From the NCBI RefSeq assembly GCF_031769215.1, contig NW_026781912.1:806001-870000 (forward strand): 64,000 nt of DNA. The letters are read 5' to 3'. The translations under genes were made by a program, and so were the position numbers. This stretch comes from Ylistrum balloti. Lineage: Eukaryota. Each line of letters opens with the position of its first letter. The first letter of the stretch is position 1. Under the pieces are notes generated by a model. It saw nothing but the letters and a program-made list of their open reading frames with translations. It searched no databases and was not told where the DNA came from. Positions 10,014 to 10,093 of this stretch are shown one piece after another.

Positions 10014-10093
10014 TGACGTCACTGTCAATGGGATATTATGACGTCACATTGATTATCATGATTGCATTTCGGGATCGCGCAACTCTAGCCTAG
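10014..10093 (+). promoter_or_regulatory. Promoter of unknown gene copy A: two CRE palindromes plus conserved 31-bp block
   Basis: TGACGTCA at 10014-10021 and 10039-10046. TGCATTTCGGGATCGCGCAACTCTAGCCTAG at 10063-10093. All three are conserved in copy B. Confidence 0.75.

What the first reader, a model, noticed from the sequence alone, without database searches (positions are those of the whole stretch)
10014..10093. Twin CRE palindromes at exactly 25-bp spacing conserved in both paralogue promoters while intervening bases diverged
Seen: copy A has TGACGTCA at 10014 and 10039; copy B has it at 61412 and 61387 (25 bp start-to-start in both). The spacer bases differ (CTGTCAATGGGATATTA vs TAGTCCTTGAAGTATTA), homology stops just upstream of the distal CRE, and a perfectly identical 31-bp block lies 16/17 bp downstream of the proximal CRE and 53/52 bp before the ATG. 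Established: TGACGTCA is the full CREB/ATF site, and tandem promoter-proximal full CREs typify cAMP/Ca-inducible genes. Inference: a natural phylogenetic footprint of a CREB-controlled, TATA-less promoter, with the 31-bp block a core-promoter or factor site I cannot name.
Basis: partly seen in the sequence, partly recalled or inferred. Interest (0 to 1): 0.75.

Follow-up and report, generated by a model that had tools for sequence, protein, structure and literature searches.

The report
Conserved twin-CRE promoter of scallop genes
Two cAMP-response-element palindromes and an unnamed 31-39-base box form a roughly 90-base promoter that scallops have kept almost unchanged in front of every copy of an uncharacterised membrane-anchor-type gene; it is an ordinary kind of control region, but it is conserved better than the protein it controls.

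Summary
The window is from the scallop Ylistrum balloti. A 1.42-kb inverted duplicate (10005-11426 and 61429-60007) carries a two-exon gene: LOC132559032 (380 aa) and its twin (401 aa). Both proteins start MGC and have no known domain.

I fetched nine more family genes from four scallop species.
- All 11 promoters have an invariant full TGACGTCA 108-112 bp before the ATG.
- All have a second CRE-type site 23-27 bp upstream (25 bp in 7 of 11). It is a full site in six and a TGACG-type variant in five.
- All have the box TGCATTTYGGGATCGCGCAACTCTAGCCTAGCTACGAGC, starting 24 bp after the proximal CRE in 10 of 11.

Parsimony changes per column on the gene tree are 0 (proximal CRE), 0.25 (distal CRE) and 0.29 (box). 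This compares with 1.74 at third codon positions and 2.66 in the intron.

A distant relative in an unidentified assembly keeps one CRE and 22 nt of the box. The pearl oyster Pinctada keeps only the CRE.

The phylogenetic footprint is therefore real and strong. Not shown here:
- the transcription start (only DNA contigs were found);
- which bZIP protein binds;
- any cAMP response.

"Exactly 25 bp" is not family-wide. "TATA-less" is only partly true. The box is unnamed, and a ZNF143/Staf-like core is only a weak lead. This is a new member of a known kind.

The parts
10014..10021 (+). Distal CRE palindrome TGACGTCA of copy A
   Evidence: It is a full site in 6 of 11 scallop promoters and a TGACG-type variant in the rest, with 2 parsimony changes in 8 columns.
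10022..10038 (+). 17-nt spacer. It is the 3' flank of the first 25-bp unit. Family consensus is TAGTCAWTGAAACATTA.
   Evidence: 1.41 changes per column. It resembles the flank of the proximal CRE, 8 of 10 in the consensus.
10039..10046 (+). Proximal CRE palindrome TGACGTCA of copy A, 108 bp before the ATG
   Evidence: Invariant in all 11 scallop promoters, with 0 changes. It is also present in L010, L012 and L011.
10047..10062 (+). AT-rich linker of fixed length between the proximal CRE and the box. It reads as a TATA-like variant in some orthologues.
   Evidence: The start-to-start distance from proximal CRE to box is 24 bp in 10 of 11 promoters. TATAAT occurs in L004, L005 and L007, and CTATAT in copy B.
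10063..10101 (+). Ultra-conserved box. The 31-mer at 10063-10093 is identical in A and B, and family conservation runs on to ..CTACGAGC. It is probably a factor site plus the transcription start region.
   Evidence: 9 changes in 31 columns, fewer than any 31-column window of the coding sequence (minimum 12, median 34). The first 22 nt are shared with L012.
10063..10074 (-). Staf/ZNF143-like core TCCCGAAATGCA inside the box (a lead only)
   Evidence: The pattern has 2 matches in the window, both in the boxes. It fits the text criteria of PMC3082894 and matches 9-13 of 18 bases of the SBS1 probe printed in PMC3627581 (counted).
10102..10146 (+). Variable 5'UTR-like stretch with an upstream ATG at 10106
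   Evidence: 1.78 changes per column. An upstream ATG lies at -41 to -48 in 9 of 11 promoters, with differing frames.
10147..11073 (+). Exon 1 of copy A (309 codons, starts MGCTFTK)
   Evidence: It is 100% identical to XP_060079621.1, LOC132559032.
11198..11413 (+). Exon 2 of copy A (71 codons plus the stop), after a 124-nt GT..AG intron
   Evidence: 309 + 71 = 380 aa, which matches P0001.
61412..61419 (-). Distal CRE of copy B
61387..61394 (-). Proximal CRE of copy B
61339..61369 (-). 31-mer box of copy B
   Evidence: 0 mismatches
59954..61286 (-). Copy B gene: exon 1 61286-60363, intron 60362-60236, exon 2 60235-59954. The ancestral stop reads TAC, which gives a 401-aa product.
   Evidence: and (P0013, 401 aa)

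Best explanation
The segment 10011-10101, and its twin at 61422-61331 on the minus strand, is the selected proximal promoter of a gene family found so far only in scallops, the pearl oyster Pinctada and one unidentified assembly. The proteins are uncharacterised and begin with MGC, a start that suggests N-terminal lipid anchoring (my inference from the sequence).

The module has four parts:
1. A distal CRE-type bZIP site.
2. An invariant proximal full CRE, TGACGTCA. Each CRE sits in a similar ~22-nt context, CATTATGACGTCATAGTCAWTG, so the pair most likely arose by tandem duplication of a 25-bp unit. That would explain the 25-bp period.
3. A fixed-length 16-nt AT-rich linker.
4. A 31-39-nt box at a rigid 24-bp distance from the proximal CRE.

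The most likely working is as follows. A CRE-binding bZIP dimer of the CREB/ATF class sits on the proximal site and is helped by the distal one. It acts together with one or more factors bound to the box. Transcription starts in or just after the 3' half of the box, about 40-60 nt before the ATG.

Shown: the sequence anatomy, its conservation and the strength of constraint. Inferred: which proteins bind, the start site and any cAMP/Ca inducibility.

Gene conversion keeps the transcribed parts of copies A and B 96-97% alike. It does not homogenise the promoters, which are 79% alike. The A/B promoter comparison is therefore an old comparison, and the retained islands are informative.
For: - Sites and box sit at the stated coordinates.
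- The organism and gene are identified.
- Eleven scallop promoters from Ylistrum, Pecten, Mizuhopecten and Argopecten align only from the distal CRE to the ATG.
- Majority-base conservation is 0.88-0.91 in the module. It is 0.43-0.57 upstream and 0.33-0.61 in the intron and 3' flank.
- Parsimony changes per column: proximal CRE 0, distal CRE 0.25, box 0.29, codon positions 1 and 2 0.8, codon position 3 1.74, intron 2.66. No 31-column coding window is as conserved as the box.
- The CRE-to-box distance is 24 bp in 10 of 11 promoters. The two CRE units share flanks, and the chance of 8 of 10 matching is about 0.0016.
- The distant relatives L010 and L012 keep a full CRE at -103/-102 and the box start. 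Pinctada L011 keeps TGACGTGACGTCA at about -84.
- A versus B identity is 96-97% in exons, 91% in the intron and 79% in the module.
- Copies cluster by species, yet Pecten has the same convergent pair about 56 kb apart.
- No Rfam family matches and there is no RNA-fold signal.
Against: - No RNA data. The only run found is about 11x DNA contigs, so the start site is unmapped. The CREs could in principle lie inside a 5'UTR or belong to an alternative promoter.
- No binding or induction data.
- TGACGTCA is bound by several bZIP classes: CREB/CREM/ATF1, ATF2/Jun and others (my knowledge).
- No conserved canonical TATA box. In mammals CRE/TATA-less promoters respond poorly to cAMP or activity (PMC5740062).
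- None of the protein clusters holds a transcriptome-derived member. This hints at low or narrow expression but proves nothing.
- The 11 promoters are related by descent, and some pairs are subject to gene conversion, so they are not 11 independent trials.
Confidence: 0.72

Rival explanations
1. This is specifically a cAMP/Ca-inducible CREB target. Phospho-CREB with CRTC/CBP on the twin CREs switches the genes on after neuromodulator or stress signals.
For: Two full palindromic CREs lie within about 135 bp of the ATG and are conserved. Multiple promoter-proximal CREs are typical of inducible mammalian genes such as c-fos and Nr4a1 (PMC5740062). No transcriptome-derived proteins sit in the clusters, which would fit a gene that is silent until induced.
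Against: No expression, binding or induction data exist. The same paper shows that the inducible class needs a nearby TATA box. Here only 4 of 11 promoters have a TATA-like variant, and copy A has none. CREB also sits constitutively on many non-inducible promoters.
Confidence: 0.4
2. This is a constitutive or cell-type-restricted CRE promoter used by another bZIP. One possibility is a CREM-like activator in male germ cells, where short CRE-bearing promoters drive fast-evolving genes. Another is ATF2/Jun in stress responses. In either case there would be no cAMP switch.
For: The promoter is very compact, with no homology upstream of the distal site in any species. The protein is lineage-restricted and evolves fast: 49-67% identity among scallops, and a library of 1.84 billion proteins held only two hits outside them, P0011 and the 1,286-aa P0012, which matched over 23 residues and was not examined. 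There is no conserved canonical TATA box. CREM and CREB share CRE targets in germ cells (title and abstract of PMC3091680, listed).
Against: There are no tissue data at all. The idea rests on analogy with mammals.
Confidence: 0.3
3. The left part of the box is a Staf/ZNF143-type zinc-finger site on the minus strand, ATCCCRNAATGCA. It would work with the CRE as a fixed-distance composite activator element.
For: The site fits the published description: CCCR at positions 3-6 and C at position 12 of an 18-bp site (PMC3082894). It carries ATGCA at positions 9-13, as in the SBS1 probe TTCCCATTATGCACCGCG (PMC3627581). The bases that vary among species fall on positions 6 and 7, of which 6 is the R of the published CCCR. 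The pattern WCCCRNMATSCM occurs in the 64-kb window only at the two boxes.
Against: Only 9-13 of 18 bases match the probe. The longer consensus was recalled from memory. It is a post-hoc choice among hundreds of known motifs. It covers only 13 of the 39 conserved bases. Its 3' third falls on the variable linker. I did not test whether scallops have a ZNF143 orthologue.
Confidence: 0.2
4. The resemblance between A and B is only young-duplicate identity or the edge of a gene-conversion tract, with no selection on the sites.
For: The coding parts of A and B are 96-97% alike and cluster by species.
Against: Promoter identity between A and B (79%) is no higher than between A and Pecten (85%) or A and a paralogue (80%). 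The same islands are kept in four species and two gene clades, while the intron and flanks are randomised.
Confidence: 0.02

Closest known systems
Mammalian promoter-proximal CRE promoters, conserved full-site class (c-fos, Nr4a1, Nr4a2, Dusp1), as catalogued in the CREB Target Gene database and discussed in PMC5740062
   Same: A full palindromic TGACGTCA, more than one CRE, position within about 150 bp of the gene start, and conservation between species.
   Different: There is no conserved canonical TATA box. The transcription start, factor occupancy and inducibility are unknown. The second conserved element, the 31-39-nt box at a rigid 24-bp distance, has no counterpart in those promoters. 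The host gene is a bivalve-restricted gene of unknown function.
Staf/ZNF143 binding site (SBS1) of vertebrate promoters (PMC3082894, PMC3627581)
   Same: The minus strand of the box has CCCR at positions 3-6, C at 12 and ATGCA at 9-13. It lies close to a gene start.
   Different: Only 9-13 of 18 bases match the printed probe. The extra ACTACA submotif is absent. The best-conserved part of the box, GGGATCGCGCAACTCTAGCCTAGC, lies outside the site. No mollusc ZNF143 has been shown here.
CRE-containing box of Kolobok transposon genes in the same genome
   Same: It is a conserved CRE placed directly in front of genes in Ylistrum. This suggests that CRE-type sites are a commonly used promoter element in this animal.
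   Different: That box is described as a CRE plus a G-rich half within a mobile element. The present module belongs to host genes whose paired arrangement recurs in Pecten (a convergent pair about 56 kb apart). It has no transposon hallmarks, and its box is found only at family members.

Membership tests
CRE-bearing (CREB/ATF-type) promoter | A full TGACGTCA or half-site TGACG close to the gene start | tested here: met
   Full sites lie at -133 and -108 from the ATG in A and B. All 11 scallop promoters have a full site at -108 to -112. Distance is measured to the ATG because the start site is unmapped.
CRE-bearing (CREB/ATF-type) promoter | Conservation of the site between species | tested here: met
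   0 changes in the proximal CRE and 2 in the distal CRE over 11 promoters, against 1.74 per column at third codon positions. The CRE is also present in L010, L012 and L011.
CRE-bearing (CREB/ATF-type) promoter | Occupancy by CREB or an ATF protein | not testable with these tools
   Needs ChIP, CUT&RUN or a gel shift with scallop proteins.
cAMP-inducible CRE/TATA promoter class | A TATA box shortly downstream of the CRE (PMC5740062) | tested here: inconclusive
   TATAAT occurs in L004, L005 and L007, and CTATAT in copy B. The other seven have TTATGAT, TTCTGAT or TTTTGAT. There is no conserved canonical TATA box.
cAMP-inducible CRE/TATA promoter class | Induction of the mRNA by cAMP or Ca signals | not testable with these tools
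   No RNA run was found. The run that was laid is DNA contigs.
Staf/ZNF143 binding site | An 18-bp site with CCCR at positions 3-6 and C at position 12 (PMC3082894) | tested here: met
   The minus strand reads ATCCC[G/A]NAATGCA.. in all scallop promoters and in L010 and L012. These criteria are loose.
Staf/ZNF143 binding site | Overall similarity to a proven high-affinity site | tested here: inconclusive
   9-13 of 18 bases are identical to TTCCCATTATGCACCGCG.
Staf/ZNF143 binding site | The factor is present in the organism and binds the site | not tested
Upstream open reading frame or peptide-coding element in the box | A conserved start codon and reading frame | tested here: not met
   The ATG at the left edge of the box (ATGATTGC) is ATAATT, CTGATT or TTGATT in 5 of 11 promoters. 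Copy B and the ENA genes use another frame.
Structured RNA element or known RNA family | An Rfam match or a fold more stable than shuffles | tested here: not met
   No Rfam match at E <= 1 in 9500-10300. The fold of 10063-10160 has z = -1.05.
Transposon-borne promoter | Many dispersed copies or transposon hallmarks around the module | tested here: not met
   The box occurs only twice in the window. The word-depth peak over 10044-10117 is about 5 times the flanks, which fits the five Ylistrum family genes. This is only a rough guide, because summed contig depth is not a copy number. The paired arrangement recurs in Pecten.

The most novel reading that the evidence does not exclude
The 31-39-nt box is the site of a still unassigned DNA-binding factor, or of a mollusc Staf/ZNF143-like protein. 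Together with the CRE at a rigid 24-bp distance it forms a fixed-geometry composite switch. The switch has travelled with this gene family since before scallops split from the unidentified bivalve of ERZ26168041, and it has outlasted recognisable similarity over most of the protein. In other words, the promoter cassette is more conserved than its gene.
Probability: 0.25. Interest if true: 0.6.

Novelty: new member of a known kind. Interest (0 to 1): 0.4.

Why it matters
Promoters of bivalve molluscs are almost uncharted. This one gives a short, sharply bounded module of about 90 bp. It is defined by natural comparison across four scallop genera and two gene clades, and it could be used directly as a compact reporter or driver in bivalves. 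It is a clean test case for CRE function outside vertebrates and Aplysia. It also flags an unnamed box under stronger constraint than any part of the protein, and so a candidate new factor site or core-promoter element. Finally, the A/B pair shows gene conversion that homogenises the transcribed region but stops at the promoter.

Tried and rejected
- **RNA evidence for the start site.** When laid on the window it proved to be about 11x genomic contigs covering intergenic DNA evenly, with no splice joints. No start site could be mapped.
- **Naming the protein.** Pfam gave no hit. A PDB profile search gave nothing meaningful. A profile search of 1.84 billion representative proteins found the scallop family, the distant relative P0011, and a weak hit to the 1,286-aa P0012 over 23 residues that I did not examine. 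A word search with P0011 added the Pinctada protein P0016.
- **Literature search by gene identifiers.** Nothing found.
- **uORF reading of the box.** Rejected: the ATG and the frame are not conserved.
- **RNA structure or a known RNA family.** Rejected.
- **tRNA genes upstream.** ARAGORN finds none. The tRNA-like stretches upstream of both copies are unrelated to each other and are not part of the homology.
- **Hand comparison of the box with other motifs.** From memory I compared it with the E2F, NRF1, RFX, STAT, NF-kB, C/EBP-ATF, CAMTA, Inr, MTE and DPE consensus sequences. None fitted well. These are recollections, not tests.
- **Literature on ZNF143 in molluscs and on scallop CREB promoters.** The searches gave nothing usable.
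Not pursued. A from-memory RII-binding helix pattern did not fit the conserved helix-like stretch AEIAHNIVEFEAEVEKLI.

Full report
**1. The observation**

- TGACGTCA occurs at 10014 and 10039, ahead of an ATG at 10147 on the plus strand. It occurs at 61412 and 61387, ahead of an ATG at 61286 on the minus strand.
- The window holds five copies of the octamer against 0.96 expected, and none of 100 shuffles reaches five.
- The two 17-nt spacers read as quoted and share 10 of 17 bases.
- BLAST homology between the copies runs from 10005 to 11426 in A and from 61429 to 60007 in B. It begins 9 bp before the distal site and ends 13 bp after copy A's stop codon.
- The 31-mer TGCATTTCGGGATCGCGCAACTCTAGCCTAG is identical at 10063-10093 and 61369-61339. 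It is found nowhere else in the window even with 8 mismatches.

**2. The gene**

Each copy is a two-exon gene.
- Copy A: exon 1 at 10147-11073, a GT..AG intron of 124 nt, and exon 2 at 11198-11413.
- The exon 1 translation is 100% identical to XP_060079621.1, uncharacterised protein LOC132559032 of the scallop Ylistrum balloti (380 aa). Copy B is LOC132559252 (401 aa).
- The 380-aa database protein P0001 served as the full-length sequence.
- The protein starts MGC and has no Pfam domain and no relative of known structure.
- A profile search of 1.84 billion representative proteins found the scallop family and one distant relative, P0011. A further weak hit, the 1,286-aa P0012, matched over 23 residues and was not examined.
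- A word search with P0011 added a Pinctada imbricata protein.
- Shared signatures are two RPxAA[KR]GxR motifs, EFxxEVxxLI and RPQLTVxGL.

**3. Related promoters**

I fetched the loci of nine scallop relatives:
- two genes each from Argopecten irradians and Pecten maximus, and one from Mizuhopecten yessoensis, all in the A/B clade;
- a paralogue clade of three tandem Ylistrum genes and one Pecten gene.

All 11 promoters share the following.
- A full TGACGTCA 108-112 bp before the ATG.
- A second site 23-27 bp upstream. It is 25 bp in seven promoters, 23 in both Argopecten genes, 26 in L006 and 27 in Mizuhopecten. It is a full CRE in six promoters, TGACGCCA in one Argopecten gene, and TGACGTAA or TGACGTAT in the four paralogues.
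- The box, which extends in the family to TGCATTTYGGGATCGCGCAACTCTAGCCTAGCTACGAGC. It starts 24 bp after the start of the proximal CRE in 10 of 11 promoters and 25 bp in copy B.

Nothing aligns upstream of the distal site in any comparison.

**4. Strength of the constraint**

On a MAFFT alignment of the whole genes, majority-base conservation is 0.88-0.91 across 10017-10106. That equals the best coding stretches. Upstream it is 0.43-0.57, and in the intron and 3' flank it is 0.33-0.61. My region limits for exons and intron were off by 3-6 nt at the splice sites, which does not affect these figures.

Fitch parsimony on the maximum-likelihood gene tree gives these changes per column:

| Region | Changes per column |
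|---|---|
| Proximal CRE | 0 |
| Distal CRE | 0.25 |
| 31-mer box | 0.29 |
| Spacer between the CREs | 1.41 |
| Linker between proximal CRE and box | 1.38 |
| Rest of the stretch before the ATG | 1.78 |
| Codon positions 1 and 2 | 0.80-0.81 |
| Codon position 3 | 1.74 |
| Intron | 2.66 |

The box has 9 changes. No 31-column window of the coding sequence has fewer than 12, and the median is 34. The elements are therefore under stronger purifying selection than any part of the protein. The rows are related by descent, so these are counts on a tree and not independent trials.

**5. Why the A/B comparison is informative**

Copies cluster by species in the tree. Yet Pecten maximus has the same convergent pair about 56 kb apart on one chromosome, against 51 kb in this window. 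The simplest reading is an old inverted duplication whose transcribed parts are homogenised by gene conversion.

The identities between Ylistrum A and B fit this:
- exons 96-97%;
- intron 91%;
- promoter module only 79%;
- stretch before the ATG 73%;
- flanks about 45%.

The A/B promoter identity is no higher than A versus Pecten (85%) or A versus a paralogue (80%).

**6. Origin of the 25-bp period**

The two CREs sit in similar contexts. The family consensus is CATTATGACGTCATAGTCAATGAAA for the first unit and CATTATGACGTCATAGTCATTGTTAT for the second. Beyond the CRE and its 5' flank, 8 of the next 10 bases agree in the consensus, with a chance of about 0.0016.

I infer that the twin sites arose by tandem duplication of a 25-bp unit in the scallop lineage. 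The 25-bp period would then be historical rather than a strict helical-phase requirement. Two facts fit this:
- The distance varies from 23 to 27 bp.
- The distant relatives have one full CRE only. L012 carries a decayed ACGCGTCA 25 bp upstream, and L010 has nothing recognisable.

The truly rigid distance is the 24 bp from the proximal CRE to the box.

**7. Depth of conservation**

- P0011 and P0014 come from an unidentified ENA long-read assembly, ERZ26168041. They are 33% identical to the Ylistrum protein over the C-terminal region aligned.
- Their genes carry ATGACGTCA at -103/-102 and TGCATTTTGGGATCGCGC(AACT) downstream. An extra 18-19 nt lies between the CRE and the box.
- The Pinctada gene has overlapping sites, TGACGTGACGTCA, about 84 bp before its ATG but no box.
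- The CRE is therefore a feature of every family member recovered here: the scallops, the ERZ26168041 genes and Pinctada. The box is shared by scallops and one other lineage.

**8. What the box might be**

- It has no Rfam match.
- The RNA fold is unremarkable, z = -1.05.
- A uORF reading fails because the ATG at its edge is missing in 5 of 11 promoters and the frames differ.
- On the minus strand its left part reads ATCCC[G/A]NAATGCA. This fits the published description of the Staf/ZNF143 site: an 18-bp site with CCCR at positions 3-6 and C at 12 (PMC3082894). It shares ATGCA at positions 9-13 with the SBS1 probe TTCCCATTATGCACCGCG (PMC3627581).
- The bases that vary among species fall on positions 6 and 7 of that site. 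Identity to the probe is 9-13 of 18.
- The pattern WCCCRNMATSCM, a consensus I recalled from memory, hits the window only at the two boxes.

This is a lead, not an assignment. It is post hoc, it covers only 13 of 39 bases, and I did not test for a scallop ZNF143. The best-kept part, GGGATCGCGCAACTCTAGCCTAGCTACGAGC, remains unnamed.

**9. Start site and TATA**

The only run offered holds the region as DNA contigs at an even depth of about 11. It has no joints across the intron, so there is no transcript evidence.

The depth peak of 57 over 10044-10117 and a loose end reading AGCCATGCTAAA reflect words shared with the paralogues. This fits the box being limited to the five family genes, but summed contig depth is not a copy number.

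The linker between the proximal CRE and the box is AT-rich. It reads TATAAT in three promoters and CTATAT in copy B, but TTATGAT, TTCTGAT or TTTTGAT elsewhere. If it acts as a weak TATA element, the start would fall in the 3' half of the box. That is inference.

In mammals, robust cAMP- or activity-induced transcription is tied to CRE/TATA promoters, and CRE/TATA-less promoters respond poorly (PMC5740062).

**10. Verdict**

The finding is a real, strongly selected promoter module with two CRE-type bZIP sites and an unnamed conserved box. The identity of the bound factors, the stimulus and the start site remain open. As a kind of thing it is familiar, a CRE-bearing proximal promoter, so I file it as a new member of a known kind.

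It has two noteworthy extras: a box more conserved than the protein, and gene conversion that spares the promoter.

The scan has noted a different CRE-containing box in Kolobok transposons of the same genome (s1-254278), which I did not check. It suggests that CRE sites are widely used in this animal.

The N runs at 183-339 and 1756-1932 were left untouched.

Noticed in passing
window 59954-60020 (- strand), compared with 11411-11413: Copy B has TAC where copy A has its stop codon TAG. It reads on for about 21-22 codons to a stop at 59954. This matches the 401-aa database protein LOC132559252, against 380 aa for copy A.
   Followed up: partly
window 10131-11443 and 59990-61302; L003 and L005: Gene conversion seems to homogenise only the transcribed part. 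A/B exons are 96-97% alike and the intron 91%, but the promoter only 79%. Pecten maximus has the same convergent pair about 56 kb apart, with identical 5'UTR-like stretches but differing CRE spacers.
   Followed up: partly
window 10106-10108; the same position in other scallop promoters: An upstream ATG lies 41-48 nt before the main ATG in 9 of 11 scallop promoters. It opens short reading frames of differing frame and length. In the ENA relatives a short upstream frame ends in TAATG, overlapping the main start. Whether any of this is transcribed depends on the unmapped start site.
   Followed up: partly
window 44160-47700: A tandem satellite of about 103 copies of a 34-bp unit, 90-96% alike in the middle and decaying at the left edge.
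   Followed up: no
window 16980-17612 (-) and 25220-25900 (+): Between the two gene copies lie an ORF with a helix-loop-helix domain (Pfam HLH, E = 3.8e-19) and an ORF with a WW domain (E = 9e-13).
   Followed up: no
window 21405-21435: The fifth TGACGTCA of the window has a TGACGCA 23 bp downstream. This is another closely spaced CRE-type pair. It lies about 3.8 kb from both the HLH ORF and the WW ORF. Its target, if any, is unknown.
   Followed up: no
window 9820-9890 and 61570-61650: tRNA-like, SINE-looking stretches lie just upstream of both promoters. They are unrelated to each other. ARAGORN found no tRNA in the window, and Rfam, run only on 9500-10300, found nothing over the first stretch.
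   Followed up: partly
L006, L008, L009 (contig JAUZWB010001261.1, about 252-272 kb): Three Ylistrum paralogues lie in a head-to-tail array about 6-7 kb apart. All have the same promoter module, but with a TGACGTAA or TGACGTAT distal site.
   Followed up: partly
L005 2728-3000: The annotated Pecten protein LOC117327060 (310 aa) starts at an internal Met. The true MGC start lies 272 nt upstream. Exon 1 there contains a tandem duplication of about 60 nt that probably broke the frame for the annotator.
   Followed up: no
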